Positions 36,505 to 51,957 of a stretch of DNA of 64,000 nt are shown in pieces. Position numbers and translations under genes: made by a program. The DNA lies in the IMG/VR virus record IMGVR_UViG_3300001460_000004, positions 1-64,000 of that record; one strand, written 5' to 3'. The notes beneath the pieces were generated by a model. The model searched no databases and was not told the origin of the DNA. It saw nothing but the letters and a program-made list of their open reading frames with translations. Each line of letters starts with the position of its first letter. Position 1 is the stretch's first letter.

Positions 36505-38010
36505 TTATGTAAAAACCTTAACGCCATACATTGTAGCAAATTCTTGAGCATCTGTTAAGTCATTTACTATGGGTTTGCCTTTAATATTTAAACTTGTGTT
36601 CAGTAACATTGGGCATCCTGTTTTTCGGTGCCACGCTTCGAGTAGTCTTCGTATGCCACTGCCGTCTGGAGCAACTGTTTGTACTCTACTTGTTCCGTCT
36701 GCGTGACAGATTGCAGGATACAAGTCTGGATGCTTACAGGTTGAGGTATACTGCATATAGTTGTTGTAGTATCCTTCAAAGTTATCACTTGCATATTCTT
36801 CTAGTATAACTGGAGCAAAAGGTCTAAATTCTTGTCTTCGTTTAATTCTGTTGACTCTGTCTTTGATGTCATGGCCACGAGGATCAGCAAGCAAACTACG
36901 ATTACCAAAAGCCCGCGGGCCAAACTCTGCTTTGCCGTTAGCAACTCCGCAGATGCCAGTCTCGGCAAGTTCCTTGACTGTTTGTAAAACTGGGTATTCT
37001 CCTTTTATGTCATATCCTAAAAATGCATGATCCATCTTCATGTGTTGTTTTTTATGTGCTAACACTGCTCCTACTGCACTGCCAGCATCACCAGGATTAG
37101 GCATAATCCATACTCGATCAAAGTAATCATATGCTATGCTATTAGCACTGCAATTTAATGCACATCCTCCCATTAAAACTAAGTTTTTACTGTCTACATT
37201 TCGTTGCATCCATATCAATGCTTTTCTAAACATATCTTCATACAGTTTTTGCGTTGCTGCGGCAATATCAAACATATCTTGTTCTGTATCAAGATCAGGA
37301 CGCCAGCGTTGACATCCTCTATGTAAATTTTCCCAAAACAGTGTAGCCGGTTCTTCGATATAAAATCTAGTAGCAACAGTACTAATCAGATCCCATCCTT
37401 CAACAACAAAATGTTCTTTTATATCATTGTATAATCTATTAGGATCGCCATACGCCGCCATACCCATAAGAATGTATTCATCTTCGTTTGGTTTTAATCC
37501 TATACGTTGAGTCATTGCACTGTACCAAAGTCCTATGCTGTGTGGATAACCTTGTGTGTAAACACGTTTTAGTTCCGTGTCTTTGGCTTCCCAGACTGTA
37601 AAGGTTTCAAATTCGCCAATGCTGTCAATACATATGACTGTAGCATCTCTAAAGTTACTAGTATAATAACCAGCGGCAGCATGACTAAGATGATGATCAA
37701 CACACTTAATAGGAGCATCGAGTTTGTAGCTTTTAAGATAACTTTTAATATTGTTTTCATTATACCTCCAACCCTGGCCTGCCCAAAGCTGTCTCAGTGT
37801 TTTTTTAAAAGGACGTTCATACCAAATGATTTCATCCGGTTCTCCCCATTGTTTAGCATAATCAATCAACGCTGTGTTTAAATGTGCATCATTCTTAACA
37901 CCGCTGAAACGTTCGCTGTGACTAGCAAATTCTAATCCGTCGTTGTTGAATACTGCTAGTGCAGCATCGTGGCTGTTGGCACTAATGCCCCAAGTTATTT
38001 TACTATGCAT
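36505..38010 (-). CDS. O-carbamoyltransferase (NodU/CmcH/TobZ family)
   Basis: HDAA, HHLSHAA, GGCALN, GDAGSAVG, EFGPRAFGNRS, RPFAP, LNTSLN. Confidence 0.95.
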   Translation of the reverse strand: MHSKITWGISANSHDAALAVFNNDGLEFASHSERFSGVKNDAHLNTALIDYAKQWGEPDEIIWYERPFKKTLRQLWAGQGWRYNENNIKSYLKSYKLDAPIKCVDHHLSHAAAGYYTSNFRDATVICIDSIGEFETFTVWEAKDTELKRVYTQGYPHSIGLWYSAMTQRIGLKPNEDEYILMGMAAYGDPNRLYNDIKEHFVVEGWDLISTVATRFYIEEPATLFWENLHRGCQRWRPDLDTEQDMFDIAAATQKLYEDMFRKALIWMQRNVDSKNLVLMGGCALNCSANSIAYDYFDRVWIMPNPGDAGSAVGAVLAHKKQHMKMDHAFLGYDIKGEYPVLQTVKELAETGICGVANGKAEFGPRAFGNRSLLADPRGHDIKDRVNRIKRRQEFRPFAPVILEEYASDNFEGYYNNYMQYTSTCKHPDLYPAICHADGTSRVQTVAPDGSGIRRLLEAWHRKTGCPMLLNTSLNIKGKPIVNDLTDAQEFATMYGVKVFT

Positions 38011-38110: not shown

Positions 38111-38317
38111 TTACAACCTCCTTATTATTACTGTGCCATATCTTGGCCAGGATATTTCGCAACCAATTGTTTCGAGTGCATGTGTTACTAATTCAATCAT
38201 CTTATGGCTATTTCCGCATATAATAGTTAATGGTAACGCATGTTGATTTAAATACACAAAGTTTTCTACTTCGCGGTCAACTTGATAATGTCTTATGCCG
38301 TGCAAGTCTAATTGCAT
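38111..38317 (-). CDS. stand-alone Smr-domain protein
   Basis: LDLHG...IICGNS. Confidence 0.7.
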   Translation of the reverse strand: MQLDLHGIRHYQVDREVENFVYLNQHALPLTIICGNSHKMIELVTHALETIGCEISWPRYGTVIIRRL

Positions 38318-38883
38318 TACAAAACTTTAAGAATCTCAGTTACACCATTTGCTACATTTGTTTGCCATGTATCTGCTTGATGTGGCGTACCCACATAGTC
38401 GGTTATATATTTGTAGCATGTGAACTGTACATTCATTTGTTTGCATACATGTGCAATAGCATACGCTTCCATATCAACTACATCAATATTATTTTGTACT
38501 ACCCACTGCTCTAGTTCATGTACAAACTGATCACCTGTGCCTAATGTAAGACCGTGTTTCATGTCAGGCGAAAAATCCAAGTAAGGTAATCCTGCTTCAA
38601 ACGGCGTAACGCCTCTTGGTGCCTGTGGCTCTGCGTTCATATCACGCTGCACAAACTTGGTAATACGATACATACCTTGCAAGTCTTTGTTGCAACTACC
38701 AACTGTGCCGTAGTTGTATACTTCAGGATGAAAGCCCAGGCTGTGTGCTTCTGCAATAGCTTGTGTGGCTGCAAACGCTGCATTAACTTTGCCTACACCT
38801 GTGTACACTACTTTGTAGTCGCCCGGTGCTTGTTTGTAAGGCAGTTCTGCTTCTAGTGCAACTAATAATATACGATATCTCAT
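38317..38883 (-). CDS. mtnN: 5'-methylthioadenosine/S-adenosylhomocysteine nucleosidase
   Basis: TGVGKVNAA, GTVG, TGDQFV, VDMEAYA, KYITD. Confidence 0.9.
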   Translation of the reverse strand: MRYRILLVALEAELPYKQAPGDYKVVYTGVGKVNAAFAATQAIAEAHSLGFHPEVYNYGTVGSCNKDLQGMYRITKFVQRDMNAEPQAPRGVTPFEAGLPYLDFSPDMKHGLTLGTGDQFVHELEQWVVQNNIDVVDMEAYAIAHVCKQMNVQFTCYKYITDYVGTPHQADTWQTNVANGVTEILKVL

Positions 38884-39068
38884 TTGTAAATAAACGGATC
38901 TCTTTTACGTAACTGTTTTAGTTTTTTTCGATATGCAATATCAGATTTAATTTGTTGATATTGCTTTTTAATCCACTTAAACATTGATCGCTCCTTTCTG
39001 TCTGTTTTGTTTTTTTGAACAGTTTGTTCATAGTTCATTCGATCTTGCCTTTGTCGAGCTGTGGCCAT
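38880..39068 (-). CDS. small basic protein
   Basis: Coupled on both sides; ends RKKLKQLRKRDPFIYK. Confidence 0.6.
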   Translation of the reverse strand: MATARQRQDRMNYEQTVQKNKTDRKERSMFKWIKKQYQQIKSDIAYRKKLKQLRKRDPFIYK

Positions 39069-40132
39069 TATTTAAGTACCTCAATTTGTCGTTGTTTGTA
39101 GTCACGATCGTTCCATTTATATTGATAGACTGTACTCTTATTGCTAGTACTAATGCTATATACATCTAAATGATTTTGTAATACTGCCCATATTTGTTGG
39201 TAATCCTCAGTTCCAAAACTACGTTTTAAATCTACACTTGCAACTTGTGGATGACCTATTGTTAAACTTTTATCATTAGGATCAAAATTATTACGTACTA
39301 GCCAATTTTTAAATTCTGCAATCTCATCTTGTTGAAATTTATAACTACCAGGATCTCTTGCCCATTCAATGTCAAAGTCTGCAGCTGCTTCTGTTTGCGA
39401 TGCCAAGTTACTAGTTGTTAAGTTATCTATTACTGCGTCAGGGCCTTCGTCACAAAACACTTCCCAATGATGTTTTCCTACAGCTTTATTTACTCCAACA
39501 TATACACCGCCTAGCGGTCTATTTAATGTCTCAATCCCAAATAATTCATAGTCAGTAGCATCTAATTTAAATCTTGGTGCTTGCAGCCAACACATTAATT
39601 GACTAGGGCGTTGCCATTCCGGTGCTTGTACTTGTTTGCGATAACTTAATGCCCAACATTCAAATTCGTGACACAATAAATTTAATTGTCGTATGTGCCA
39701 ACGGGTTTCTGGATCAGCTTGTGTGTAGTAACTGCTTATGTTAGTACTACTACCTTGCAGTTTTTCAAAATGATAGTGCAATTGATTCATAGCATCATGA
39801 TTTGGACCTCCGGCAGCTGAGTCAGGCGCACGTTTACCTGGAATAATACAGTTCCCCCAACTATACACATCATCAATTGTATAGTCTAACTGGCTATTAT
39901 TAATTGCCTGGACACTGTTGTTAATTTCATTTATAATAAAATTTCCGTTACGGTCGTTGTTAGCAAAACCCATAAAACAATAATTTTTTTCTAATATTAA
40001 ATTAGAATCTATAACATTGTTTAATGATGTTAGCCATTTACGTGATAGTGTGTTGTCGTGTACATCAATGTGTACAGTAACAAAACTTTCACTATCCCAA
40101 TCTCTAAGTACTATGTTAATTTGATCAAGCAA
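39068..40132 (-). CDS. hypothetical protein in the modification operon
   Basis: NQLHYHFE, LNLLCHEFE, VGKHHWE conserved-looking His/Glu motifs. Confidence 0.7.
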   Translation of the reverse strand: MLDQINIVLRDWDSESFVTVHIDVHDNTLSRKWLTSLNNVIDSNLILEKNYCFMGFANNDRNGNFIINEINNSVQAINNSQLDYTIDDVYSWGNCIIPGKRAPDSAAGGPNHDAMNQLHYHFEKLQGSSTNISSYYTQADPETRWHIRQLNLLCHEFECWALSYRKQVQAPEWQRPSQLMCWLQAPRFKLDATDYELFGIETLNRPLGGVYVGVNKAVGKHHWEVFCDEGPDAVIDNLTTSNLASQTEAAADFDIEWARDPGSYKFQQDEIAEFKNWLVRNNFDPNDKSLTIGHPQVASVDLKRSFGTEDYQQIWAVLQNHLDVYSISTSNKSTVYQYKWNDRDYKQRQIEVLK

Positions 40133-41432
40133 TTGATTTCCACCACTCTAACAACTCATTATCTTGTTGTTGTAATATTTGTTCCATTCCATACGAATCT
40201 TTACGTATTTCTTCAAGTCTAAGTATTCTCTTTTTTCCTTTACTAAGTCCTTGTTGCCATTCATTAGGCCATTGTTCCATAAACACAGGTCTTGTTTTTA
40301 ACTGCTCAAGTGTATCAATTAATGTTTGATTGCTTAACTGTGGTATTATTTTATCAATTTGTAAGTGCAATAAATCTCGAGGTAAAGCCAAAGGACTTAA
40401 TATAATGTCAGGCGTGAAGCTGAATACTACTTTACTTAGTATTCCAACTCCAAGNTGATTAGCAAAGTNGTCAATGTTTACCATCTCAAACAATCCAGGC
40501 AATGTTAGTGTAAAATCTATACGCATCTGCCTGGGATGCTTGGCTAATTCAACTCCTTGTTTGAAGTTTTCTTTCCATTTTTCCCAGACGAGACCGGTTC
40601 TAATATATTCCCCAATTCGTCCAGTTCCGTCAATACTTGCACACACTTGCCAATCCCTAATTTTAGCAAGTATATCAGTATATAAGTTAATACCGCGATA
40701 TTCAATCCTACTAAGATTTGTATTGTATCTTGCATAAATGTTTGGTCCGTCTCCTAAATCAATTATTTGTTTCATGTACCGCCAATGCTGTTCATACATT
40801 AACGGTTCGCCACCTACCCAGTATATTTCTTCAATTCTATGCTCTTGTACTGCTTGTAAAAATTCAGCTTCAACTTGTGTGTCTTGGAACTTGCTAATTT
40901 GTTGACGAACTGACTTTTGCATCCAGTTATTTTTGGGATCATCCCAATTAACCATATTGTTTTGTTTTTGTTCTGATTCCCAACTACTGCTCAACATGTC
41001 GCCACACATTCGACATTTGAAGTTGCATAGATTACTAAAACGATAATCCCAACTAACTGGTTTTAATGTTGTATGCCCGTTTTCGTCAGTGTTCTCCCAT
41101 ATGCTTTCGTATTTTTGTTTAAACAAATGCCAAAAATAGTCCTTGTATACATCAGTATTTAACAACTTATTGTTACACACATCACACTCTGACAGTGTTT
41201 CCCCATTCATCATACGCTTTCGGACACTTTGCATATGATCACTATTCCAGTGTTGTTCTAGTGTCAATGGCTTGTATTCCCCAGTGCCACTTTCTGTATC
41301 AATATACTGCTCAAAATTTTGTGCAGGCTCTCTACTAGCACAGCACAATCTACGCTCAGTTTGTGGGCTAAGATATGTGTGAGTCCACGGTGCTAAACAA
41401 AGGCTTTCGGGTTTGATATCAGGAACCTTCAT
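40125..41432 (-). CDS. N-terminal twitch radical SAM enzyme
   Basis: CLAPW..CC..CDVC; CNFKCRMC; GGEP; SIDG..YIR. Confidence 0.93.
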   Translation of the reverse strand: MKVPDIKPESLCLAPWTHTYLSPQTERRLCCASREPAQNFEQYIDTESGTGEYKPLTLEQHWNSDHMQSVRKRMMNGETLSECDVCNNKLLNTDVYKDYFWHLFKQKYESIWENTDENGHTTLKPVSWDYRFSNLCNFKCRMCGDMLSSSWESEQKQNNMVNWDDPKNNWMQKSVRQQISKFQDTQVEAEFLQAVQEHRIEEIYWVGGEPLMYEQHWRYMKQIIDLGDGPNIYARYNTNLSRIEYRGINLYTDILAKIRDWQVCASIDGTGRIGEYIRTGLVWEKWKENFKQGVELAKHPRQMRIDFTLTLPGLFEMVNIDXFANXLGVGILSKVVFSFTPDIILSPLALPRDLLHLQIDKIIPQLSNQTLIDTLEQLKTRPVFMEQWPNEWQQGLSKGKKRILRLEEIRKDSYGMEQILQQQDNELLEWWKSIA

Positions 41433-42630
41433 AAGCAATAGCCTTTGCAAATTCACTATGATGCGTTGCTAGGTTTTGTTTGCGGCGATTGTCTAATAAT
41501 GCAACTTGCTCTCTTAATACGTTGCCATCCAAACTGTTGCCGCCTTTAATAAAATCAATAATTCGATCAAATTCCAAACGGTGAGACTTGCTCACTTTAG
41601 CACTGCGTAGGTTGTCTATTGCTAATTTTTTTGCATACTCTGGCAATGTGCTTATACTAAAATAATAGGCTTCGTGCATCATATTCCAATAAACAAAATC
41701 AAATCCTTGTTGATCAATCCAATTGGCAAGACCTTCGAGATAAAAAATATTAAATACATTTACCGTACTACACACTTGCAACTGTAAATTTGGCATAGTT
41801 GTTTTAAGATCAACATAACGACTTATGTTATGTTGTACTTCTTTCCATACTGCATTAGTGCGTTGATATTCAAATCGCTCGTTGAGGTCGTCAATACTAA
41901 ATGCAATTTCAACTGTTTTAAAATGTTTCCAAATTTCTGGGCCTTGCTTTGGATATTGTGTTCCATTAGTATTATAATGTATTTCTACATTTTTTGCAAC
42001 CCCTTTTTTAACAATACTTGACAAAAGATCAAAATGTTCTTGAATCATAAACGGCTCGCCGCCTGTAAATTCAATGTATTTGATATCATCAACTATAGTG
42101 TCCATTTGTTCCCAAAAAGTTTGACTTTTTCTTGGCCATGCACCTTTTTGTAACATAGTATGATGAAAACTTCCTTTGCGTTCTGCTTTATTTGTAAACT
42201 TTAATTCTTCTGCAGCAAATTGACTACTGCTCCAGCTACCGCATATACGACATTTTAAGTTACATATATTTCCAAGTTTTAAATCTAAAAACTGTAGCCC
42301 TTTACTTTTGTTGGTCCATTCTGTATCTGGTATTACATGCTTTAATCTGTCTAATGTGTGCATCCTCTTACTTGTACGCCCACTTGCTTCTTCATTCCAA
42401 CATTTACGACAGGTTGGTGGTTTTTCTTTGTTTAAAAACTCCTCACGCAACTTAGTCATATAATTACCATCAAGTACGTTGTTGAGATCAGCACTTTGTA
42501 AATCAAATTTATTACCGTTGCTGTCCGTTATTTCATCTTCTGCTAAACAACACGGGCGTAAACTTCCAATTGGACTAGTTTCTAAACTAGTCCAGGGTAA
42601 CACACAAAAATTATCGTGTGGTATTTTCAT
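41419..42630 (-). CDS. N-terminal twitch radical SAM enzyme
   Basis: CVLPW..PCC..CRKCW; CNLKCRIC; GGEP; TNG. Confidence 0.93.
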   Translation of the reverse strand: MKIPHDNFCVLPWTSLETSPIGSLRPCCLAEDEITDSNGNKFDLQSADLNNVLDGNYMTKLREEFLNKEKPPTCRKCWNEEASGRTSKRMHTLDRLKHVIPDTEWTNKSKGLQFLDLKLGNICNLKCRICGSWSSSQFAAEELKFTNKAERKGSFHHTMLQKGAWPRKSQTFWEQMDTIVDDIKYIEFTGGEPFMIQEHFDLLSSIVKKGVAKNVEIHYNTNGTQYPKQGPEIWKHFKTVEIAFSIDDLNERFEYQRTNAVWKEVQHNISRYVDLKTTMPNLQLQVCSTVNVFNIFYLEGLANWIDQQGFDFVYWNMMHEAYYFSISTLPEYAKKLAIDNLRSAKVSKSHRLEFDRIIDFIKGGNSLDGNVLREQVALLDNRRKQNLATHHSEFAKAIAYEGS

Positions 42631-44333
42631 CGTATTACTTCCAACTCTGGTAAAATATCTAATGCACCCTCTTTACGTAATACATCAAGTTGATCAGTTC
42701 TACGCCAAAATTCTGGAATTAAATGACTGTGATCTCCATTTTTTAAAAAGTTAATAGCACTTTCAAATCCAACTGTTGCCCTGTTTAGTTTATCGTGGGG
42801 TCGTAACCATTCTAAATGTTTTTCATAACGATCAATCAATTCTTTTTTAACATTGTTGGGTGCAATGTCAATTCTAAAATGTGCAGGATCTTGTAGGCAA
42901 TTTACATTCAAGTCTTGATGTCTAATATATCCTTTTTCNACCCAGCTTTTATGAAAATCAGTAATGTGCCAAGCATTCATTATGCTAAGTGTGGGACTGA
43001 CGTAAAAGTCTACATTTGGGCAAACTTTCATCATTAATTCCCTGTTTCGTTCTACCACATCCCATTTAGTACCTTTACGTATGTACTCGGCTTGCGGGCC
43101 CATTCCGTCTAAACTTGCTCCTACTGCTACACTATCAAATTTTTTCCAGTAATCAAACACTTCTCGATCTTTTAGTTTAGTATGTGTAAAGTTTGTATTG
43201 TACACAAGACGCACGTCAAACTTTCCTCGCTTTTCAAGTTCATCTAAAATATTATAATGTTCTTTCATCATCAGTGGCTCGCCACCTGCAAAGTAAATTT
43301 GTTCTACAAATTCTAAGTGTGGTTCTAATTGCTCCCACATATCCATTTCAGTACGACCAGCATAGTTAAGTACCTGATTTTGTTTTTTCCATTCAGGCCC
43401 GGCTAGTGCAGCTTGATCTTTATACCAACTACTACTAAAAATATGCCCACAACTTCTACAACTCAAATTACACAAATTGCTAAATCGAATATCCCAATAG
43501 GTCATTTCAAATTTATCAGCTGACCCATCTGATTGAGTAGCTAATGCACGTTCAATATGATGCCCGTGGTGTTTGTTTGCACTTTTTCTACCACTAAAAA
43601 ATCCACTGTTTTCACTCTCATAGCAACGCACACATGCTTTGCTTGGTTTTTCATTTAGCATGTTATTGCGTATTTCACGCATGCCAGGTCCATTCCAAAT
43701 TTCTTCAAGTGTATTTTCTTTTGTGTTTCCTACATCACCATCATGTTCTGCCATACAACAAGGATATGCACCGCCAGTAGGCCATGCATGCAAATGTACC
43801 CAAGGATACATGCAAAACATTTTACTTTCGTCTAATAAAAAGTTCTCACGATTGCTTAATTGTTTTAAATCTATTTTAAGAGGATTAGCACTTCCATATT
43901 CGTATATTTCTTTTTCACTAAGTGGATGTTTGTTTATTTTATGTTTTTTCCATCCTTCATCGATGCATGCTTTTACAGTAATTGGAACTTCGTCTGAACT
44001 CATAGCTTTCAGTAATTCAAACTCGTCTCCAATATGAGGATTTGATGAAAGTAATATTACAAAAAAATTACTAATGTCTTGTTGATTTAATTCATTTTGT
44101 AAATTTCGTAATACTAAACCAACTTTACTGTTTGGTGTGTATAAATCTCCTGTACTATGTTTGACAATAATGCGATCTTTATTTTGATACTTGTCTTTTC
44201 GTATCGATGCAATAGTATTAGCTAGAGCTGTTTGTGAACTTTCGTAATCTGTAAAGTCCCAAACATCTAAATCAATTCGTCCAACAATGTTGTAAACTTT
44301 TTCTAAGTCATTTAGTCTGTTTATTATTTTCAT
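42627..44333 (-). CDS. twitch radical SAM enzyme with an extra ~170-aa N-terminal domain
   Basis: CMYPW..PCC..CVRC; CNLSCRSC; GGEP; SLDG..YIR. Confidence 0.93.
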   Translation of the reverse strand: MKIINRLNDLEKVYNIVGRIDLDVWDFTDYESSQTALANTIASIRKDKYQNKDRIIVKHSTGDLYTPNSKVGLVLRNLQNELNQQDISNFFVILLSSNPHIGDEFELLKAMSSDEVPITVKACIDEGWKKHKINKHPLSEKEIYEYGSANPLKIDLKQLSNRENFLLDESKMFCMYPWVHLHAWPTGGAYPCCMAEHDGDVGNTKENTLEEIWNGPGMREIRNNMLNEKPSKACVRCYESENSGFFSGRKSANKHHGHHIERALATQSDGSADKFEMTYWDIRFSNLCNLSCRSCGHIFSSSWYKDQAALAGPEWKKQNQVLNYAGRTEMDMWEQLEPHLEFVEQIYFAGGEPLMMKEHYNILDELEKRGKFDVRLVYNTNFTHTKLKDREVFDYWKKFDSVAVGASLDGMGPQAEYIRKGTKWDVVERNRELMMKVCPNVDFYVSPTLSIMNAWHITDFHKSWXEKGYIRHQDLNVNCLQDPAHFRIDIAPNNVKKELIDRYEKHLEWLRPHDKLNRATVGFESAINFLKNGDHSHLIPEFWRRTDQLDVLRKEGALDILPELEVIR

Positions 44334-45667
44334 AGTGTATTGTACCATTCGGATATTTCTGGGAATGTGTCCTGGAAATTCTTATCACGACGAACATCAT
44401 ATTGTGAAAAGAAATGTTTGAAGTCGTTGTGTAATTTGGGCATATCAAAACTATCACTATGTGGAGTTTTAACCACGTCCAAATAATCAATTAGTCTTTG
44501 TGTATGATTAATTTCATGTTCGTGTATAATATCATCGCGGTGTGAATACTTGTCTAACCAATTTTGCAATCTTTCTTTAAATCTTGTTCTCAAATAATTA
44601 GGCATTATCAAAGCACTTTGAAAACTAGGAAAACGTAATATATTAAGTGTGAAATTAACTCTTTCCTTTCCATATTGTTCTTTTAATGTTACCATCTCAT
44701 CTAAGTATTCAGGTAAACTTTCTAAACACAATGCATTAATTGTACACATACTGTGTACTGCGGTTAACTTACTGTTTAACAATACATGCATATTATCTAT
44801 CCATTGTTGATAATCTAATCCATCACGTATGTATTCAGCTTGGGTACCAACAGCTTCACAACTGGTATAAATTTCTACACTAGGAAGATCCTCTGTAGCA
44901 TCTAAAAACTCTTGAACTTTTTTAGTATCAAAGCCTAGATTGCTATTAATTGCTAATTTTGTTTTTGACTTGCCTCTATTTTCTTTAAACCATTCTATTA
45001 ACTTCCAAGTATGGCCACTCATCAATGGTTCTCCGCCTGTAATACGTAGTTCATCTAACGTGCGATGTAAGTCACTTTCCCACCATTTAAAAAATGCTTC
45101 AATATAAGGATTTGTTTCAGTATATTTATACAGCTGACTACTGGCATGCTCATGAGTAAAATGGTTTCTACCATCACTAGCAAGTTCTGTATAAGCACCG
45201 TTTTTCTTAATGTCTTTGACCCATGTTGTGCTAAACGCTGGGTTACAGTAGCTACATGCAAACTGACATGTCCTATCAAATGCAATTTCTAATGTTTTTA
45301 AATTAACATCTTCTTCAACTGGGGTTTGATATGCTTGTATTAATTCTTGCTCAGGATAAATTTTACTCTTATATACACGATCGCTTATGTTGTTGCGATC
45401 AATATCTTCAATTTTCCAACAATACTCACAACCTTTTGGACGCTTACCGCATTTCATTAAACGCCTATCGTCTTTCTTTTCTGGTGTATTGTGCAACATT
45501 TTTGGATTTTCAATCACAGCATTTACATCAATTTTATGTGCAGGCGGATGATGGCAACTAGTTGTCATCCCACTTCCTAACCATATAGTAGCGTTATACC
45601 ATTTTGCACCGCAAAATGAAGGACTTATTTTATCAAGTACTTGCTGGCGAAATTCAAGATCATTCAT
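44330..45667 (-). CDS. N-terminal twitch radical SAM enzyme
   Basis: CGAKW..SCHHP..CEYCW; CQFACSYC; GGEP. Confidence 0.93.
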   Translation of the reverse strand: MNDLEFRQQVLDKISPSFCGAKWYNATIWLGSGMTTSCHHPPAHKIDVNAVIENPKMLHNTPEKKDDRRLMKCGKRPKGCEYCWKIEDIDRNNISDRVYKSKIYPEQELIQAYQTPVEEDVNLKTLEIAFDRTCQFACSYCNPAFSTTWVKDIKKNGAYTELASDGRNHFTHEHASSQLYKYTETNPYIEAFFKWWESDLHRTLDELRITGGEPLMSGHTWKLIEWFKENRGKSKTKLAINSNLGFDTKKVQEFLDATEDLPSVEIYTSCEAVGTQAEYIRDGLDYQQWIDNMHVLLNSKLTAVHSMCTINALCLESLPEYLDEMVTLKEQYGKERVNFTLNILRFPSFQSALIMPNYLRTRFKERLQNWLDKYSHRDDIIHEHEINHTQRLIDYLDVVKTPHSDSFDMPKLHNDFKHFFSQYDVRRDKNFQDTFPEISEWYNTL

Positions 45668-46803
45668 TATAATGTTTCAATCCATTTCTTAAAATTATTT
45701 GGAAATTCATCTTTTAGCTGCTGGCTATATTCTAAAAATCTTTGTTGATTATGCAGGCATATATTTTTTGCTTGTTGTTGAAAAGTATTTAAGTCGCTTT
45801 TACACATAGATAAAATAGTTTGTGCTATTCCTTCGGCTCTAGTCTCGCCATCTTCTATACTATCCCAACTTTCATCAATGAGACTGCTAAACGTTTGAAA
45901 CCCTAAATTATGCAAATGTTTGTAGAAATACTGACTACCCATTGCAACAAACGGGTGCCCAATAATTATAGGTTTCCAAATTTTTTCAGTTCTAAACATT
46001 GGGGATTCTTGGAAAATAGTTTCACTTACTAAACTAAAATATGTATCAATATAAGGTTCGGGTTTTATGTATGCCTCTCCCCATTCAGCATGTCCACCAA
46101 CTTTAAACAAATGACTTTTTATATTACGATCAATTGAAGGTCTAGCTATACGCTGTGCATAACGGTCAACTTCATACTGTTTTGGTAATAACACAATTGG
46201 TTCTATTTCATCCATTAAGTTTGTATCAGCTTCGTATACCTGCATGCCACCACGTGGTGCTGCACGTTCATGTAGGTTAGTGTACAAACTGTCTTGCAAT
46301 AAATTAAGTTGCCGTAAACGTGCTAGCATCCATTTGCGATGTGTTCGCATACGCCCGTTTAAAAATAAAAATGTATATGGTTTATCTTTTTTGTTATGTA
46401 TTGCACTCACACTTGACATTGCTTGAATGTTTTCATCAAAGTTGCTTAACTTAACTGCAAAGTTATCGTGATTATAGTAATCAACATCTTCTGCTATTTC
46501 ACCTCCACTAATAACTGACATTTTTCGATCTAACACTAAATCTAAAATATTTAAATGCACAAATTGCCCTGACATTGTAGTGCTACCTTCTGCAGGATTA
46601 CTAAACACAAACTTTACACCTTGATCAATAAAACTTCTTATTTTTTCATTGTGTTCTGCAACAGTCGTCCTGCCAACAATGTAAGTTGCATTAACATCAA
46701 ATTCCTCTTTGCCAAAATCAAAAAAGTCACTATGTGCTAACGGAGCTAGTAATTCTGGCACTTCACAATTATAATCAATCAATAGTTTATGTGTTGTCAG
46801 CAT
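45667..46803 (-). CDS. putative glycosyltransferase (GT-B/GT10-like)
   Basis: LVSETIF..RTEKIWKPI..HPF..GFQTF..DESWD. Confidence 0.6.
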   Translation of the reverse strand: MLTTHKLLIDYNCEVPELLAPLAHSDFFDFGKEEFDVNATYIVGRTTVAEHNEKIRSFIDQGVKFVFSNPAEGSTTMSGQFVHLNILDLVLDRKMSVISGGEIAEDVDYYNHDNFAVKLSNFDENIQAMSSVSAIHNKKDKPYTFLFLNGRMRTHRKWMLARLRQLNLLQDSLYTNLHERAAPRGGMQVYEADTNLMDEIEPIVLLPKQYEVDRYAQRIARPSIDRNIKSHLFKVGGHAEWGEAYIKPEPYIDTYFSLVSETIFQESPMFRTEKIWKPIIIGHPFVAMGSQYFYKHLHNLGFQTFSSLIDESWDSIEDGETRAEGIAQTILSMCKSDLNTFQQQAKNICLHNQQRFLEYSQQLKDEFPNNFKKWIETL

Positions 46804-48220
46804 GGTACTTACATTCTTTCCACCAGTCTATCATTTCTGGAAATGTTGCTTTAAAATTTGTATTGCGTCTAGTATCGTGTTCTGTAAAAAACCTATAAAA
46901 GTCAGCACGATTTTGTTTTTGGTAATCTAAATCAAGCTCACTCCCTTTGCTCATCCATGTAATATCACGTTGCATACGTTGTACTTCATAGTCTTTAAAT
47001 CCATGAAATCTTGTTGCTTCTGTTTCCATATTAGATTTCATAAATTCTAGTATGCTTTGCATATAACTAACGTAGCTTGCCGGCAATAGTTGCAGACTTT
47101 GCCATGTGGGTTGTCTTAACAACGGAGTATCAAACCATATACGTTGATATGTCTTACTGTGTGTTTGCCGTAATTTTAATATGTTTTCAAGTAAAGTTTT
47201 TAAACTTGTGACGCTTAAATTATTCATTGTAATAATAAATGTTAAACTATTTCTCTCAGGAACATCTACTAGGTATTCGGTAACTCTATCCCACATTAAA
47301 TCAAAATTAAGACCATTACGCATGTATTCAGCTGGTTTACCCCACCCGTCAACGCTTACATATTGCATAAAGTGTTCTAATGTATCCGGTGTATTGCAAA
47401 GTTTTTGCAAGTATACTTTATATTTTTCCCATAACTTTTGTTCAACACTAAAATTACTAGTAGTAGATAAGTGCAAATTAGGTTTTGGATTATCTAATAC
47501 ATAATCAAAAACTCGATATGTATTTTTATCCATTATGGGTTCTCCGCCTGTCATTCTAAAATGTTCTAACTCTGGGTATAACTCAGGCCACCATTCCCAA
47601 AACGATTCCACATATGGATTGTGTTCTCTATTTGGGATTGGGCGTCTTTCTCCAGTAAAATATTCTGGTGCATTGTGCGGTTTTTTTGTAGGATATGCAC
47701 CACTGGCTTTACTTTCTTGCATCCAACTACTACTAAACTGTGGTGAACAATAACTGCATTTTAAATTACATACATTGTTAAAGTTAACTTCAACATAACT
47801 GGGATTTATATCTTTGAGACTATCACTTGTAATAATTGTATCAAAGTCTTTAGCTGCCCAAGGCTCTCCACTGCGATAACTTCTATCACTTAGTTGCCCG
47901 CTATCTTCAATTGCCCAACAATAACTACATTCTTTAGGACGAACACCCTCAAGCATTAACTTACGTTGCGACTTTTTATATGCGGTGTTGTGTAATCCAC
48001 TTCGACTGTTTTGTAAATCGCTTTGTTGTATTTTATGCAATGGTGGATGATAACAACTGTTGGTGTGCCCAGTTGGCAAATGCAAGCTCACTTGTTTCCA
48101 TTTGGCAAGACACATACTTGGACTGACTTTATTCAGCCTTTGTTGCATTAACTCTGCATCGCTTAAGAACTTGCTTTTGAAGTTAACGTCTGATTCGTCA
48201 CCTTTATTCATTTTAGCCAA
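46787..48220 (-). CDS. N-terminal twitch radical SAM enzyme
   Basis: CLAKW..SCYHP..CSYCW; CNLKCSYC; GGEP. Confidence 0.93.
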   Translation of the reverse strand: MAKMNKGDESDVNFKSKFLSDAELMQQRLNKVSPSMCLAKWKQVSLHLPTGHTNSCYHPPLHKIQQSDLQNSRSGLHNTAYKKSQRKLMLEGVRPKECSYCWAIEDSGQLSDRSYRSGEPWAAKDFDTIITSDSLKDINPSYVEVNFNNVCNLKCSYCSPQFSSSWMQESKASGAYPTKKPHNAPEYFTGERRPIPNREHNPYVESFWEWWPELYPELEHFRMTGGEPIMDKNTYRVFDYVLDNPKPNLHLSTTSNFSVEQKLWEKYKVYLQKLCNTPDTLEHFMQYVSVDGWGKPAEYMRNGLNFDLMWDRVTEYLVDVPERNSLTFIITMNNLSVTSLKTLLENILKLRQTHSKTYQRIWFDTPLLRQPTWQSLQLLPASYVSYMQSILEFMKSNMETEATRFHGFKDYEVQRMQRDITWMSKGSELDLDYQKQNRADFYRFFTEHDTRRNTNFKATFPEMIDWWKECKYHADNT

Positions 48221-49227
48221 TCTAAGTAGTTGTGGTTAGCACGTTGAGGAAAATAATTACTTTTTCCACCGTCTCTTTCAATATCTAATGTTAAACAATG
48301 CATACCTCCATCCCAAAAACCTTTGTGTGTAAAGTTACATTGTAGCACATTTATACCCAACTTGTCAAGGAATTCTAACAGCCTCGGGTTAGTGCTTATG
48401 CTCAATACTGTGTTGTTGTTAAGTACTAACATGTTAACACTAAACTGGGTTTCTTTATAATTGCCTACCCAATTCTGTGCATGTTTTTGTATGTGTTCTG
48501 CAAATTTGCCATTACCATTTACATTAGAATTTACCCACCATTCCCCAAAATGATCGTTACGGGCAGGCATCTCTTCTGGCATATGAAACACTTGCCAATT
48601 TGGAAAACTTTCTTTGTAATCTTGTTTCCAATGTGTTGTAACTATTACTCCTGGGGCAACTGGACAAAAAACACCATCGCTGTGTCCGCCAGTGCGTATC
48701 ATGTGTACTCGGTAATCCTGTGCCCACTTCAAAAACTCTATACTTACTTGCGGCATAACATGTTCATGACTTTCAGCATCAACAAAAATATCCTTGCCAA
48801 CACGTACAACACTAGGACCGCACAAACAGTTGTTATCTTCACCTGGCCTAGTTACAATTATTTCTCCTTCTAATTCTCTTAATGCATATTCCCAAGGATC
48901 TTTGTAACTTTCATCTAATTGATGATACAATGTATTTCCTAACACAAGTCCTCTATCACGTGGCATAATAGGTGGCTTAACAAGATATCCACTTGTATCA
49001 CAGTGCTGCCCTCTATTAACGCTATTAAAACTTGGACGAGTAACTTTTACCCCGTGTTCAACGAGTATTTTTTCAATGTTTTTTAAATCATTTTTTGTAG
49101 TTTCGGTTATTTCAATAAATGCTTCTGCTACATCTGGATTGTACTCACTGTAAAACTCTATAGGATATACATCTCCTAACCATACATGTTTTAATTGGTC
49201 CCATCCAGTGTGACTATTGATTTGCAT
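48208..49227 (-). CDS. amidinotransferase, second paralog
   Basis: WDQLKHVWLG, PRD, GGHSDG, WDGGMHCLT. Confidence 0.87.
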   Translation of the reverse strand: MQINSHTGWDQLKHVWLGDVYPIEFYSEYNPDVAEAFIEITETTKNDLKNIEKILVEHGVKVTRPSFNSVNRGQHCDTSGYLVKPPIMPRDRGLVLGNTLYHQLDESYKDPWEYALRELEGEIIVTRPGEDNNCLCGPSVVRVGKDIFVDAESHEHVMPQVSIEFLKWAQDYRVHMIRTGGHSDGVFCPVAPGVIVTTHWKQDYKESFPNWQVFHMPEEMPARNDHFGEWWVNSNVNGNGKFAEHIQKHAQNWVGNYKETQFSVNMLVLNNNTVLSISTNPRLLEFLDKLGINVLQCNFTHKGFWDGGMHCLTLDIERDGGKSNYFPQRANHNYLDWLK

Positions 49228-49906
49228 AATAAACTTTCCATACCTCGTCAAATAATTCGTTACTCTGGGCCTCTAGTTCACGTTGCATATTAACACAAAA
49301 TAAATTATAGTCATCATTAATATCTATAATTTGATCAGCATAGTCATCATTAACTTTTACATCTTGATAGTAACTCCAATGAAAATCAATAGTGTTCCAT
49401 GCACTTTCAACTGTTTGAATAAGTCCACTAAGTGGTGTATTGTTAGCAACTTCGTTCTGTCTTTTAACGTCTCTAAAATCTTTTTGAACCTCTTGATATA
49501 TATCAAATGCTAACTCATTTAATTGTTCTGCATTATTGCACTCAGGCCAACTTTCATCACGTATACTGTTGTAATGCTCAACAGGATCAATATCAGGTGC
49601 AGGTGCTTCTCGATATCTACCGTTAATATTCCATTCTCTACATAATGCGTCTTTAAGTTTTGTTTTTATTACTGTAATACGTGCTTTTGGATATGTTCTT
49701 CGTAAGAGTGCAGTATCTCTACAATGCGTTAACAAAAACGGTCTATCCCAAGACTTGTCTAGATAATACTTGTCGTTGCTGGTATATTCCTTTGCTTCGG
49801 AATGAAAATCAAAACTAGTATTGGGTGTTTTCCATTCTTTGTCAACTAAACAACGATAATAACGGTTTCCTCCTCCGCCAGGATAATAACTAATAATTTG
49901 CATCAC
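49214..49906 (-). CDS. hypothetical protein with a sulfotransferase-like N-terminus
   Basis: YYPGGGGN; internal YNSIRDESWP module. Confidence 0.5.
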   Translation of the reverse strand: MMQIISYYPGGGGNRYYRCLVDKEWKTPNTSFDFHSEAKEYTSNDKYYLDKSWDRPFLLTHCRDTALLRRTYPKARITVIKTKLKDALCREWNINGRYREAPAPDIDPVEHYNSIRDESWPECNNAEQLNELAFDIYQEVQKDFRDVKRQNEVANNTPLSGLIQTVESAWNTIDFHWSYYQDVKVNDDYADQIIDINDDYNLFCVNMQRELEAQSNELFDEVWKVYYANQ

Positions 49907-50826
49907 CAGCCCTCTGCTTTCCTTATTACATCAATTTCTTTTTTCATTATATCTAAATTAGTCCAATTTGATTGATAGTGGTGTTTAAAAAATTTACTAA
50001 CAGTTGAGTCAGCTATGTCAATGACAGGCAAATCTAATTGTACACTTAAAGCATTACTCACCTGTTGCATATCAACAGATTGATACTCACTGTAAATAGT
50101 TTCAAGGCTGTCAAATGATTGTACTTGAGTATAATCCCAGTCATTAAGCATTGTTAGCCAAGTGCCGTAGCGTGATCCAAGAATGGCTTGCTCACCGTAT
50201 TCAACGTCACGGCCTACATTGTGCCATATACTGAGATTGTCCATATTACGCTTATGTACTGCATCCTTAAATTCAACAACATTGGGTTTGCGTCCTCGGT
50301 TTAAGCACATTTTAACACCTTCTCTAAACCCTGCTCTCCAGGCGTGGAATGCACTTCCATTAGGGTAAGTTGTGCTATAACAATCATGCATTGCCCAATA
50401 CAGTGGATCAAAACAAAATTCTACATCTGTTTCATCATTGCCTAAACTATTTTCATGTGTACGCATGTTGTACACAAATTCTTTTGTCCAGCTGCTTAAT
50501 CCACCATTACCATATGTTAGTCCATTTATATGATTTTTTGCTCTCCATCTGAACACAGCACGTTCGCTTTCTAGGGAATCAAATCGTAAAGTTTGATTGA
50601 AAAAGTCCCAGTCTGGTAAATTGTCTCCATCAATTAATATAAACCGATCTGTGTTACTAGCATCAGCGGCAGCCTTGTGTGCAGCATCGCTTCCTTTAAC
50701 ACCATCTACACGTTCAGCCCACGGAATATGATTTCGTATGCTTATCCAAAATTCTTCTTTCTGAGGTTCATCATAGCTGAGATATATGCAGTCTAAATCT
50801 GCTACATCAACTGTTTTAATGTCCAT
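49903..50826 (-). CDS. GT-A fold glycosyltransferase
   Basis: SYDE, GVKG..AAHKAAA, FILIDGDN (DxD), YGNGG, AWRAGFREGVK. Confidence 0.75.
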   Translation of the reverse strand: MDIKTVDVADLDCIYLSYDEPQKEEFWISIRNHIPWAERVDGVKGSDAAHKAAADASNTDRFILIDGDNLPDWDFFNQTLRFDSLESERAVFRWRAKNHINGLTYGNGGLSSWTKEFVYNMRTHENSLGNDETDVEFCFDPLYWAMHDCYSTTYPNGSAFHAWRAGFREGVKMCLNRGRKPNVVEFKDAVHKRNMDNLSIWHNVGRDVEYGEQAILGSRYGTWLTMLNDWDYTQVQSFDSLETIYSEYQSVDMQQVSNALSVQLDLPVIDIADSTVSKFFKHHYQSNWTNLDIMKKEIDVIRKAEGW

Positions 50827-51146
50827 TGTTTTGCCTGTTCTGTGCTGCTTAAAAGTTCAACATGATGTTGATGTGTTGAGTACTCACCAGCATTGCTGGG
50901 TATAAGTTTATTTACGTGTACATCTAGGTTGATGTAATAAATTTTACTATCTTTAACAAATACATTTGAAGAATTTAAATTATACTGGTCTTGTGTAATT
51001 TCAATATAGTCTCCTGGTATGTCTTCCATAGTGTATACAATTGGTTCACCTGTTTGTTTGTTGTAATACAATCTCCAAAAAGGAACTATCTCTTCAGGCC
51101 AAACATAATTTTTCCAAAACTCTTCAAAGATCTCATTGTTGTTCAT
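50802..51146 (-). CDS. hypothetical protein
   Basis: Coupled ORF in the operon. Confidence 0.6.
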   Translation of the reverse strand: MNNNEIFEEFWKNYVWPEEIVPFWRLYYNKQTGEPIVYTMEDIPGDYIEITQDQYNLNSSNVFVKDSKIYYINLDVHVNKLIPSNAGEYSTHQHHVELLSSTEQAKQWTLKQLM

Positions 51147-51957
51147 ATTCTTTTATCCAATCTTTTATATAGTAATGAAATACTCCTTGCTGATGCACTG
51201 TATTAATTTTTAAACCAGTTGGTACTCTTTCCCAAACTAATTCACGTGTCCAATCGTTTGTTTGTGATTTAATAATGTGTTTTTTCATATGCACAATTGA
51301 TGGAGAATTTGTTAACGTAACTTTTTCTTTTCCAATTACAGTAGCAGCCATTGCATATACTACATCAGTTGTTGGTATAGTTTCGGGAAATTTTATTAAT
51401 GTTTTAAATTGCTCCCAGTTTTGAAATATATTTCTAACCAACTCAAAAAACTCTTTTGCAGTATTACTTAGCCTCCAATACACCATTGCATTATATGTAT
51501 CAGGTAAACAATTTTGATCAAATATACTTCGATAATGTCTGCTGTTGCTTGTGTTGTTATAATAATCTCGACAACCTGTACTAATTACAAGATCTCTTTT
51601 TCTAAATATATCCCAGTAATAATCAATATTACTAGTAACCAGGCAATCGGCTTCAAGTTTAATTGTTTCTCTAAACGGGCTAGTGTTAAACACTTGCCAA
51701 TCATTTGCAAATGCATTAGCATTTGGGTTTTGCATAATGCGTACATAATCAAACAATGGATCTTCAATTAATACATCAGTTAACAAGCAAACTTGATTGT
51801 ATGTGTTGTGTTGTTTAATACTGCCAGCCAGGCACTTTGCACACTCTATGTACTCGTTGCCTGTTGCTACAATCATATACCCTTGTTCACTTAGTACTGG
51901 CAACAATGTCTCCCAAGTGATGTTTGCCCATGGCATGAAAATCTGTATCTTGCACAA
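51133..51957 (-). CDS. GT8-like glycosyltransferase (true start probably near 51906)
   Basis: GY..A...Y..A..LA.SIK, SPFRETIKLEAD, TTDVVYA, VHMK. Confidence 0.65.
   Translation of the reverse strand: MCKIQIFMPWANITWETLLPVLSEQGYMIVATGNEYIECAKCLAGSIKQHNTYNQVCLLTDVLIEDPLFDYVRIMQNPNANAFANDWQVFNTSPFRETIKLEADCLVTSNIDYYWDIFRKRDLVISTGCRDYYNNTSNSRHYRSIFDQNCLPDTYNAMVYWRLSNTAKEFFELVRNIFQNWEQFKTLIKFPETIPTTDVVYAMAATVIGKEKVTLTNSPSIVHMKKHIIKSQTNDWTRELVWERVPTGLKINTVHQQGVFHYYIKDWIKEYEQQ

What the first reader, a model, noticed from the sequence alone, without database searches (positions are those of the whole stretch)
40125..48220. Five near-tandem radical SAM enzymes with N-terminal auxiliary Cys clusters, in two subfamilies
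All have CxxxCxxC and GGEP preceded by a twitch-like module, which in BtrN or anSME is C-terminal. Three have C..PW...CC (40125, 41419, 42627) and two have C.AKW...SCxHP (44330, 46787), suggesting different auxiliary-cluster ligation and chemistry. Such a heavy, oxygen-sensitive Fe-S investment in a probably aerobic marine phage implies strong selection.
Basis: partly seen in the sequence, partly recalled or inferred. Interest (0 to 1): 0.75.

Follow-up and report, generated by a model that had tools for sequence, protein, structure and literature searches.

The report
Phage radical-SAM sugar-tailoring gene block
A marine jumbo T4-like phage carries five different, conserved radical SAM enzymes of a catalogued but uncharacterised family (iron-sulfur 'twitch' module at the front instead of the back), set among sugar-building and sugar-transferring genes, so they most likely edit a phage-made glycan rather than being redundant copies.

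Summary
Five intact minus-strand ORFs (40125-48220) each carry CxxxCxxC, GGEP and an N-terminal four-Cys module. All five score well above the curated cut-off of NCBIfam NF033640 (N_Twi_rSAM), so the domain order is already catalogued, though no member appears to be characterised. The N-terminal module is homologous to the C-terminal twitch domain of BtrN, its only significant PDB match. The five share only 16-29% identity, and each has one ortholog in each of five related 316-353 kb phage genomes. All five occur together, in the same order, in 42 of 44 related loci, so they are not redundant. The 230 kb contig holds 12 copies. The block also encodes a GT-B-fold protein, GT-A-like proteins, an amidinotransferase, a carbamoyltransferase and an MTA-nucleosidase-like protein, with NDP-sugar dehydratase and aminotransferase genes nearby. 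Elsewhere, family members sit among GT8 or GT2 genes, and one is fused to GT2. Best reading: a radical sugar/glycan-tailoring set in a tail-fibre-adjacent island. The substrate and the glycan's destination are inferred, not shown. The "two ligation types" idea is weak, because the same four Cys are conserved in both groups.

The parts
40125..41456 (-). r443: N-terminal-twitch radical SAM enzyme (CC type)
   Evidence: NF033640 at 289.6 bits, cut-off 170. C20, C38/C39, C91, C94; CxxxCxxC at 144; GGEP at 215. An ortholog is present in 44/44 related loci.
41419..42630 (-). r403: N-terminal-twitch radical SAM enzyme (CC type)
   Evidence: NF033640 at 339.6 bits. The AF2 model has pLDDT 92.7. Thousands of metagenomic homologues share 61-88% identity.
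42627..44348 (-). r573: N-terminal-twitch radical SAM enzyme (CC type) with an extra ~175-aa N-terminal extension
   Evidence: NF033640 at 409.1 bits over residues 175-570. Pfam SPASM matches residues 179-243 at 1.1e-11. Orthologs are only 419-456 aa.
44330..45667 (-). r445: N-terminal-twitch radical SAM enzyme (SC.HPP type)
   Evidence: NF033640 at 301.5 bits. It is 52% identical to gene _202 of the cultured Ralstonia phage RsoM2USA, which lies two genes from a carbamoyltransferase.
45667..46803 (-). u378: probable GT-B-fold glycosyltransferase embedded among the rSAM genes
   Evidence: The AF2 model has pLDDT 85.9. Foldseek PDB hits are almost all GT-B enzymes (PglA, T4 BGT, FucT, SenB), with E 5e-3 to 0.1 and TM about 0.4. 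AFDB cluster hits include GT1, GT10 and GT47 proteins. Present in 36/44 related loci.
46787..48220 (-). r477: N-terminal-twitch radical SAM enzyme (SC.HPP type)
   Evidence: NF033640 at 313.6 bits. Sister group of r445. The G001 ortholog is 649 aa and also matches u230 at 32% identity.
48208..49251 (-). Amidinotransferase (AGAT/StrB1/HsvA/SxtG family)
   Evidence: phmmer against PDB: HsvA 8.5e-10, AGAT 2.8e-9, StrB1 4.6e-7. A 27-30% identical paralogue is present in 39/44 related loci.
49214..49906 (-). u230: unknown protein
   Evidence: No convincing family hit. It matches part of the 649-aa r477 ortholog of G001 at 32% identity.
49903..50826 (-). u307: probable GT2-like (GT-A) glycosyltransferase
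   Evidence: An Atlas neighbour cluster is auto-named 'Glycosyltransferase 2-like', score 0.99. Three of nine orthologs weakly hit GT2 Pfam families at E 0.013. A conserved D-G-D is present. Present in 38/44 loci.
51133..51957 (-). u274: possible GT-A-fold glycosyltransferase (weak)
   Evidence: The ortholog profile hits only glycogenin-1 (GT8) chains, at E 0.09-1.5, across the region up to the E-A-D motif. It is a paralogue of u266 (hhalign 97.7%).
51887..52687 (-). u266: paralogue of u274, with a D-A-D motif
   Evidence: hhalign probability 97.7%, E 1.4e-12. No Pfam hit.
39068..40132 (-). u354: conserved unknown partner next to r443
   Evidence: Present in 44/44 related loci. No Pfam, NCBIfam, PHROG or PDB match.
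38317..38883 (-). MTA/SAH-nucleosidase-like protein (possible 5'-deoxyadenosine removal)
   Evidence: Pfam PNP_UDP_1 at 8.1e-14. NCBIfam nucleosidase/MTAN models at 3.5e-23 to 2.4e-11, all below their cut-offs. Found in only 4/44 related loci.
36505..38010 (-). NodU/CmcH-type carbamoyltransferase
   Evidence: Carbam_trans_C at 7.3e-47 and Carbam_trans_N at 1.6e-39. phrog_1601 at 6e-99. Present in 44/44 related loci.
28298..29308 (+). NDP-sugar epimerase/4,6-dehydratase
   Evidence: PF01370 at 2.5e-47 and PF16363 at 3.6e-39.
29235..30347 (+). DegT/DnrJ/EryC1-type sugar aminotransferase
   Evidence: PF01041 at 3.7e-49.
7546..8766 (-). Sixth N-terminal-twitch rSAM paralogue in the window
   Evidence: NF033640 at 207.2 bits. 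All motifs are present.
54137..55531 (-). Tail-fibre-like gene at the head of the co-directional block
   Evidence: Weak PHROG hits to tail-fibre and virion structural families. A TATAAATA box lies at 55585-55592 on the minus strand.

Best explanation
The five genes are non-redundant, anciently diverged paralogues of the N-terminal-twitch radical SAM family (NCBIfam NF033640). They form the core of a conserved, tightly packed minus-strand block in a marine T4-like jumbo phage. The block also holds one GT-B-fold and up to three GT-A-like transferases, an amidinotransferase and a carbamoyltransferase. NDP-sugar dehydratase and aminotransferase genes lie about 10 kb away. Proposed mechanism (inferred): each enzyme cleaves SAM at its CxxxCxxC cluster, and the 5'-deoxyadenosyl radical abstracts a hydrogen from a different sugar position of an NDP-sugar or growing glycan. 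The fully Cys-ligated auxiliary cluster then takes the electron, as in BtrN, giving a keto sugar. Variants of this step could give epimerised or deoxygenated sugars. The resulting keto and amino groups would then be aminated, amidinated or carbamoylated by the neighbouring enzymes. The nucleosidase would clear 5'-deoxyadenosine and the phage A-type carrier would supply clusters. No protein in the block has membrane segments, and the block lies downstream of tail-fibre and giant virion genes. The product is therefore most likely a complex glycan made in the cytoplasm. I split its destination roughly evenly between virion proteins and the host envelope.
For: Enzyme identity. All five exceed the NF033640 cut-off. 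The motifs are invariant in 66 sequences. The twitch profile hits the BtrN twitch, E 6e-4 with Cys aligned, and also finds C-terminal twitch modules in canonical-order rSAMs of another cluster.

Non-redundancy. Paralogues share 16-29% identity. Each of the five forms a 1:1 ortholog group across six genomes, SH-aLRT 96-100. All five are present in 42/44 related loci in the same order.

Sugar context in the window. Amidinotransferase, carbamoyltransferase, GT-B-fold u378, GT2-like u307, NDP-sugar dehydratase and DegT aminotransferase.

Independent contexts elsewhere. Vibrio phage K566 has four N_Twi rSAMs interleaved with two GT8 genes above the Pfam cut-off. Metagenome contig L123 has six N_Twi rSAMs among four GT2 genes, one of them a rSAM-GT2 fusion. 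A MAG cluster starts with a nucleotidyltransferase. RsoM2USA pairs the r445 ortholog with the carbamoyltransferase ortholog.

Location and support functions. No TM segments in the block. MTAN-like gene. A-type Fe-S carrier in the genome.

Literature. rSAM cassettes and GT8 genes occur in the host-recognition island of pelagimyophages (PMC7029224). BtrN is a sugar-type two-electron oxidase whose auxiliary cluster has four Cys ligands (PMC9012708).
Against: No family member has a known substrate, and no relevant paper was found. The GT assignments inside the block are weak to moderate: u274 and u266 have no Pfam hit, u378 has TM of only about 0.4, and u307 has E about 0.01. Most SPASM/twitch enzymes modify peptides, and the best Foldseek hits are SkfB, anSME and CteB. 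Some family members are fused to TPR repeats. Several dispersed paralogues sit beside DNA-metabolism genes rather than sugar genes. The sugar-nucleotide genes are about 10 kb away on the other strand. The 44 related loci come from one phage lineage and are not independent samples. The destination of the product is not addressed by any direct evidence. The late-promoter motif is not enriched.
Confidence: 0.55

Rival explanations
1. The block makes a free, aminoglycoside-like or guanidino/carbamoyl sugar metabolite (a secreted or intracellular small molecule), not a glycan attached to a macromolecule.
For: The enzyme set parallels aminoglycoside pathways: a BtrN-like twitch, a StrB1-type amidinotransferase, a carbamoyltransferase of the NodU/CmcH type (that TobZ belongs to this family is from my own knowledge) and a DegT aminotransferase. 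A cyanophage paper called a similar trio 'antibiotic synthesis genes' (PMC12801897). All proteins are soluble.
Against: Three or four transferase-like proteins, and the position next to tail-fibre genes, fit macromolecule decoration better. No exporter or cyclitol synthase was found in the block. The family's other contexts are rich in GT2 and GT8 genes.
Confidence: 0.15
2. The enzymes modify peptides or proteins, such as RiPP-like crosslinks, epimerisation or formylglycine-type oxidation of virion or host proteins.
For: The nearest solved folds are SkfB, anSME and CteB, and AlbA is the top Swiss-Prot model. Family members fused to TPR repeats exist. Giant virion proteins lie nearby.
Against: The fold matches are weak (TM 0.35-0.41) and reflect the generic rSAM core. 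No RiPP recognition element or precursor-like gene was detected. The twitch module matches BtrN, not the sactisynthases. Neighbours are sugar enzymes. A direct fusion to GT2 exists.
Confidence: 0.12
3. The block hypermodifies phage DNA or nucleotides, for example by building a modified sugar on a base.
For: T4 beta-glucosyltransferase is among the fold hits of u378. Weak similarity to viperin and MoaA, which act on nucleotides. A P-loop kinase lies at 35390-36223.
Against: No ThyA-family hydroxymethylase was found in this contig or in four related genomes, three of them complete. The viperin scores are far below cut-off (16-34 bits against 180). The T4 BGT hit is no better than those to PglA or FucT.
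Confidence: 0.05
4. The five are redundant or decaying duplicates of a single activity.
For: They belong to one family and lie side by side.
Against: They share 16-29% identity. Each is conserved 1:1 at 62-72% identity in relatives. All catalytic motifs are intact.
Confidence: 0.03

Closest known systems
NCBIfam NF033640, 'twitch domain-containing radical SAM protein' (N_Twi_rSAM)
   Same: All five, and 11 copies in the contig, match full-length above the curated cut-off. The domain order is the same: N-terminal twitch, then the rSAM core.
   Different: The family is only a catalogued HMM. I found no characterised member and no paper. The five fall in different deep branches of it.
BtrN (PDB 4M7S/4M7T), the twitch radical SAM dehydrogenase of butirosin biosynthesis
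   Same: It is the only significant PDB match of the N-terminal module. It has the same four-Cys pattern (C, C, CxxC) with similar spacing. Its substrate is a carbohydrate-type aminocyclitol. Its auxiliary cluster is fully Cys-ligated.
   Different: In BtrN the twitch follows the core, whereas here it precedes it. The core sequences are not detectably closer to BtrN than to other rSAMs. The enzymes here have an extra ~100-aa helical C-terminal region.
SPASM/twitch peptide maturases and anSME (SkfB, CteB, AlbA, anSMEcpe)
   Same: These are the best whole-model Foldseek hits. They share the rSAM core with GGEP and an auxiliary Fe-S module.
   Different: TM is only 0.35-0.41. Apart from SkfB, which is a twitch enzyme with one auxiliary cluster, they carry two auxiliary clusters C-terminally. 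They use peptide substrates, often with an RRE. None of these features is found here.
Radical SAM cassettes in the host-recognition island of marine T4-like myophages, and the T4-like environmental genome with 12 rSAM genes plus an A-type carrier (PMC7029224, PMC5332604)
   Same: T4-like marine phage. rSAM genes sit beside tail fibres, GT8-type transferases and sugar genes. This genome also has many rSAM genes plus an A-type carrier.
   Different: Those reports only list the genes. Here the block belongs to a 316-353 kb jumbo lineage and is conserved rather than hypervariable.
Cyanophage S-SCSM2R 'antibiotic synthesis' trio (PMC12801897)
   Same: It pairs a DegT-like aminotransferase, a radical SAM 'maturase' and an inosamine-type amidinotransferase in a T4-like marine phage.
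   Different: It has a single rSAM. I did not test whether that rSAM belongs to NF033640.

Membership tests
NCBIfam NF033640 N_Twi_rSAM | Full-length HMM score above the curated cut-off (170 bits) | tested here: met
   289.6, 339.6, 409.1, 301.5 and 313.6 bits for the five ORFs.
NCBIfam NF033640 N_Twi_rSAM | Twitch module N-terminal to the radical SAM core | tested here: met
   The Cys tetrad lies 45-55 residues upstream of CxxxCxxC. Pfam SPASM matches the N-terminus. The profile matches the BtrN twitch.
Radical SAM superfamily | CxxxCxxC cluster motif and GGEP SAM-binding motif | tested here: met
   Invariant in 66/66 aligned sequences. PF04055 hits all five ORFs but exceeds Pfam's cut-off in only three.
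Radical SAM superfamily | Reductive cleavage of SAM | not testable with these tools
   Needs anaerobic biochemistry.
Twitch-domain rSAM enzymes (BtrN type) | One half-SPASM module with 3-4 Cys for one auxiliary [4Fe-4S] cluster | tested here: met
   Four conserved Cys, with no CxxCx5Cx3C second-cluster motif. BtrN residues 163-237 align with Cys matched.
Twitch-domain rSAM enzymes (BtrN type) | Module is a C-terminal extension of the core | tested here: not met
   The module is N-terminal in all copies. The literature defines SPASM/twitch as C-terminal extensions (PMC9012708).
Twitch-domain rSAM enzymes (BtrN type) | Auxiliary cluster actually bound and positioned at the active site | not testable with these tools
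   The AF2 model is confident, but its coordinates and cofactors were not available to measure.
SPASM-domain rSAM enzymes | Seven to eight Cys binding two auxiliary clusters | tested here: not met
   Only four conserved auxiliary Cys.
RiPP-maturing rSAM enzymes | RiPP recognition element and an adjacent precursor peptide gene | tested here: inconclusive
   No RRE-type domain in Pfam or NCBIfam and no obvious precursor gene. Small ORFs were not examined in depth.
Viperin (NF038283 / TIGR04278) | Score above the family cut-off (180 / 450 bits) | tested here: not met
   16-34 bits only.
Host-recognition glyco-island of marine T4-like myophages | Island next to tail-fibre and giant virion genes, containing glycosyltransferases, sugar genes and rSAM cassettes | tested here: met
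   Tail-fibre-like gene 54137-55531 and the giant virion ORF starting at 56335. GT-like genes. T4-type major capsid protein.
Host-recognition glyco-island of marine T4-like myophages | Hypervariable between close relatives | tested here: not met
   Gene order is conserved in 42-44 of 44 related loci.

The most novel reading that the evidence does not exclude
A lineage of marine jumbo phages (and cultured Vibrio and Ralstonia phages) runs a radical glycan-editing assembly line. Five or more distinct permuted-twitch radical SAM enzymes each functionalise a different unactivated sugar C-H. Together with transferases and amidino- and carbamoyl-transferases, they build a heavily modified glycan on the virion or the infected cell. 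This would be enzymology with no characterised precedent in any virus.
Probability: 0.4. Interest if true: 0.8.

Novelty: new member of a known kind. Interest (0 to 1): 0.55.

Why it matters
The family is very large: about 8,700 clusters at 50% identity match at E<=1e-30. Its nearest relatives are almost all viral, and it has no known reaction. Phages that carry 6-13 copies each, with a conserved five-enzyme block wired to sugar genes, point to a substantial unexplored radical carbohydrate chemistry. That chemistry could affect virion surfaces or host recognition in the ocean. Two cultured phages with homologues (Vibrio phage K566 and Ralstonia phage RsoM2USA) make the question directly testable.

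Tried and rejected
- Megablast of the block against isolated phages found no match.
- A genome-contig scan with one protein found no relatives. The paralogue alignment was too divergent to seed a scan.
The MAG locus L124 could not be used as a handle. The cellular range of the family was therefore not mapped.
- Profile searches of u307, u266, u378 and u354 against PDB sequences gave nothing useful.
- hhalign of u274/u266/u307 profiles against a K566 GT8 or RsoM2USA DUF6071 protein showed no relation.
- Pfam, NCBIfam and PHROGs are silent on u354, u230, u114 and u330.
- Foldseek of the r403 model found only generic rSAM cores, with no close solved relative.
- The T4 late-promoter box TATAAATA is not enriched (8 found, 9.6 expected). 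Sigma-70-like and terminator scans are at background.
- No flavodoxin, 2Fe-2S ferredoxin or clear GT2 Pfam match in the contig.
- No ThyA-family gene in five genomes, which argues against hydroxymethyl-pyrimidine DNA glycosylation.
- Literature searches for an N-terminal twitch rSAM returned nothing specific.


Full report
**What is there.** The window is the first 64 kb of a 230,036-bp IMG/VR virus contig that CheckV rates about 66% complete. The contig has a T4-type major capsid protein. That protein is 65-70% identical to those of jumbo myoviruses such as PA5oct, Vibrio phage 2.275.O, Phosso and CBB. One other gene (45667-46803) sits between the fourth and fifth. Neighbouring genes abut or overlap by 1-38 nt. 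Each ORF has one CxxxCxxC, one GGEP and an upstream C...(C)C...CxxC set, and the quoted motifs are correct.

**Family.** All five score 290-409 bits on NCBIfam NF033640, 'twitch domain-containing radical SAM protein' (N_Twi_rSAM), whose cut-off is 170 bits. The unusual domain order is therefore already catalogued and is the defining trait of a named family. Pfam places its SPASM model on the N-terminus in three of the five, one of them below Pfam's cut-off.

I built a profile of only the N-terminal ~100 residues from 11 paralogues. Its single significant hit in the whole PDB is BtrN, at E 6e-4. The hit covers residues 163-237, which is BtrN's C-terminal twitch, and the first Cys, the middle Cys and the CxxC align. 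The same profile also finds C-terminal twitch modules in canonical-order rSAM proteins of an unrelated cluster. That serves as an internal control for 'same module, other end'. The literature defines SPASM/twitch modules as C-terminal extensions. It describes BtrN as a two-electron oxidase of an aminocyclitol whose auxiliary cluster has four Cys ligands (PMC9012708).

**Cysteine ligands and the 'two subfamilies'.** In 66 aligned family members, C9, C74, C77, the rSAM triad, GGEP, S135, N222, S245 and R257 (r403 numbering) are invariant. A Cys is always present at position 27 or 28. The extra Cys of the 'CC' pair occurs in 50 of 66 sequences and is Ser in the SC.HPP proteins. Both groups thus keep the same four candidate ligands. 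In a tree of 56 copies from six genomes, the two SC.HPP proteins fall in one clade (SH-aLRT 96). The three 'CC' proteins do not form a clade.

**Not redundant, and more than five.** The paralogues share only 16-29% identity. The contig holds 12 copies with all motifs, 11 of them above the family cut-off, including a sixth in the window at 7546-8766. It has 14 Radical_SAM Pfam matches in total. Five related viral genomes of 316-353 kb, three of them with terminal repeats, carry 6-13 copies each. Each of the five clustered genes forms a 1:1 ortholog group with one member per genome, with SH-aLRT support of 96-100. Among 44 related viral loci with full flanks, all five are present in 42. The genes r445, r573, r403, r443, the unknown u354 and the carbamoyltransferase are present in 44, always in the same order. 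These loci belong to one lineage, so they show conservation rather than independent recurrence.

The family is very large. About 8,680 clusters at 50% identity match at E<=1e-30, and they include fused double and triple units. The nearest ESM Atlas clusters are 97-100% viral. The region occurs nearly identically in marine and brine metagenomes from at least 15 studies. That confirms 'marine'.

**Context in the window.**
- 48208-49251 is an amidinotransferase of the AGAT/StrB1/HsvA/SxtG family.
- 36505-38010 is a NodU/CmcH-type carbamoyltransferase.
- 38317-38883 resembles MTA/SAH nucleosidases, though it scores below their cut-offs. Such enzymes remove 5'-deoxyadenosine, the inhibitory by-product of radical SAM enzymes (established knowledge).
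- The gene embedded among the rSAMs (u378) gives an AF2 model of pLDDT 85.9. Its PDB matches are almost all GT-B glycosyltransferases, but weak: E 5e-3 to 0.1 and TM about 0.4. Its AFDB cluster matches include GT1, GT10 and GT47 proteins.
- u307 is GT2-like by its Atlas neighbour and by weak Pfam hits in three of nine orthologs.
- u274 and u266 are paralogues, with only faint GT-A hints.
- No protein between 36 and 56 kb has a membrane segment.
- About 10 kb away lie a clear NDP-sugar epimerase/dehydratase and a DegT-type aminotransferase. Further upstream are a hexapeptide acyltransferase and an AMP-binding enzyme.
- The block follows a tail-fibre-like gene and a giant virion ORF on the same strand.
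- Elsewhere the genome encodes an A-type Fe-S carrier and a Stf0-like sulfotransferase.

**Context elsewhere.**
- In the cultured Vibrio phage K566, four N_Twi rSAM genes are interleaved with two GT8 genes above the Pfam cut-off and a GT4-like gene.
- A metagenomic contig has six N_Twi rSAMs among four GT2 genes. One protein there is a direct rSAM-GT2 fusion.
- A MAG cluster begins with a nucleotidyltransferase. It also holds four N_Twi units, B12-rSAMs and an AsnB-type amidotransferase.
- In the cultured Ralstonia jumbo phage RsoM2USA, a 52% identical ortholog of r445 lies two genes from a 47% identical ortholog of the carbamoyltransferase.
- Other members are fused to TPR repeats or stand alone. 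The family as a whole is therefore not proven to be carbohydrate-specific.

**Literature.** A T4-like marine environmental genome with an A-type carrier and 12 rSAM genes was noted in 2017 (PMC5332604). rSAM cassettes, GT8 genes and sugar genes were described in the tail-fibre 'host recognition cluster' of pelagimyophages (PMC7029224). A cyanophage with a DegT-like aminotransferase, an rSAM and an amidinotransferase was read as 'antibiotic synthesis genes' (PMC12801897). I found no paper on the N-terminal-twitch family or its chemistry.

**Most likely mechanism.** Shown here: enzyme family, motifs, twitch homology, divergence, orthology, synteny and neighbours. Inferred: each enzyme uses the 5'-deoxyadenosyl radical to abstract a hydrogen from a different sugar position of an NDP-sugar or nascent glycan. 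The four-Cys auxiliary cluster then accepts the electron, as in BtrN, giving a keto sugar, or in variants an epimer or deoxy sugar. The aminotransferase, amidinotransferase and carbamoyltransferase then elaborate these positions, and the transferases assemble the glycan. The destination (virion proteins or host envelope) is open. The soluble proteins and the tail-fibre-adjacent, co-directional arrangement lean slightly towards virion or cytoplasmic-face targets. A late-promoter box upstream of the tail-fibre-like gene is only a lead, since the motif is not enriched.

**Rivals.**
- A free aminoglycoside-like metabolite fits the enzyme set but not the number of transferases.
- Peptide or protein modification fits the superfamily's habits and the weak fold hits to SkfB, anSME and CteB (TM 0.35-0.41). 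It does not fit the neighbours or the BtrN-type twitch.
- DNA hypermodification is disfavoured, because no ThyA-family hydroxymethylase occurs in five genomes.
- Redundant duplicates are excluded by the orthology pattern.

**Verdict.** This is a real, conserved feature. As sequences, the five are new members of a catalogued but functionally unknown family. The interest lies in the scale and organisation (6-13 copies per phage, a fixed five-enzyme block, sugar wiring), and in the existence of cultured phages in which it can be tested.

Noticed in passing
window 56335-64000 (continues to 70848 in the contig): The ORF listed as 2452 aa in the window is a 4837-aa ORF in the full contig. It matches a virion structural protein family (phrog_10938) and baseplate/head-closure fragments. 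It may correspond to the giant VrlC-type gene that borders host-recognition islands in other T4-like marine phages.
   Followed up: partly
window 42627-44348, residues 1-175: r573 carries a ~175-aa N-terminal extension with no family match. Its orthologs in related phages (419-456 aa) lack it.
   Followed up: partly
L064:4361-6310 (G001): The r477 ortholog of a related complete phage is 649 aa and also matches u230 of this window (32% identity). This suggests a fusion that ties this unknown protein functionally to the rSAM.
   Followed up: partly
window 7546-8766 and 8626-9696: A sixth N-terminal-twitch rSAM lies far from the block. It is convergent on and overlaps (as called) an endolysin-like gene with GH19 and peptidoglycan-binding domains. 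A TATAAATA box sits at 8772-8779 just upstream of the rSAM start.
   Followed up: no
window 19498-25075: A 12-segment membrane protein of unknown family is followed by an unknown gene, an AMP-binding enzyme, a hexapeptide acyltransferase and an AAA ATPase. This may be a second modification or export module, which could bear on where the sugar product goes.
   Followed up: partly
contig 187679-187969 and 183451-184065 (outside the window): An A-type Fe-S carrier (PF01521) and a Stf0-like carbohydrate sulfotransferase are encoded elsewhere in the genome. No flavodoxin or 2Fe-2S ferredoxin was found in the 230 kb available.
   Followed up: partly
proteins P0133-P0166 (metagenomic): Many family members are natural fusions of two or three complete N-terminal-twitch rSAM units in one polypeptide (about 800-1200 aa). 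Others are fused to TPR repeats or GT2.
   Followed up: partly
L129 (Ralstonia phage RsoM2USA 125035-129043): The r445 ortholog is flanked by three DUF6071 paralogues between it and the carbamoyltransferase. DUF6071 has no known function and no detectable counterpart in this window.
   Followed up: partly
window 41419-44348 in sequencing run X3: One run labelled with a single coded organism, rather than a metagenome, holds 95% of the sampled words of this region. This is a possible clue to a host or culture.
   Followed up: no
window 40455, 40469, 42939: Ambiguous bases (N) inside r443 and r573 give X residues. They do not break the frames.
   Followed up: yes
window 35390-36223: A zeta-toxin/AAA_33-type P-loop kinase with a hydrophobic N-terminal segment lies at the downstream edge of the block. 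It is absent from the same position in related phages.
   Followed up: partly
window 25754-27031: A strong match to a phage HNH-endonuclease family (phrog_1314, 366 bits) lies between the sugar-nucleotide genes and the upstream module.
   Followed up: no
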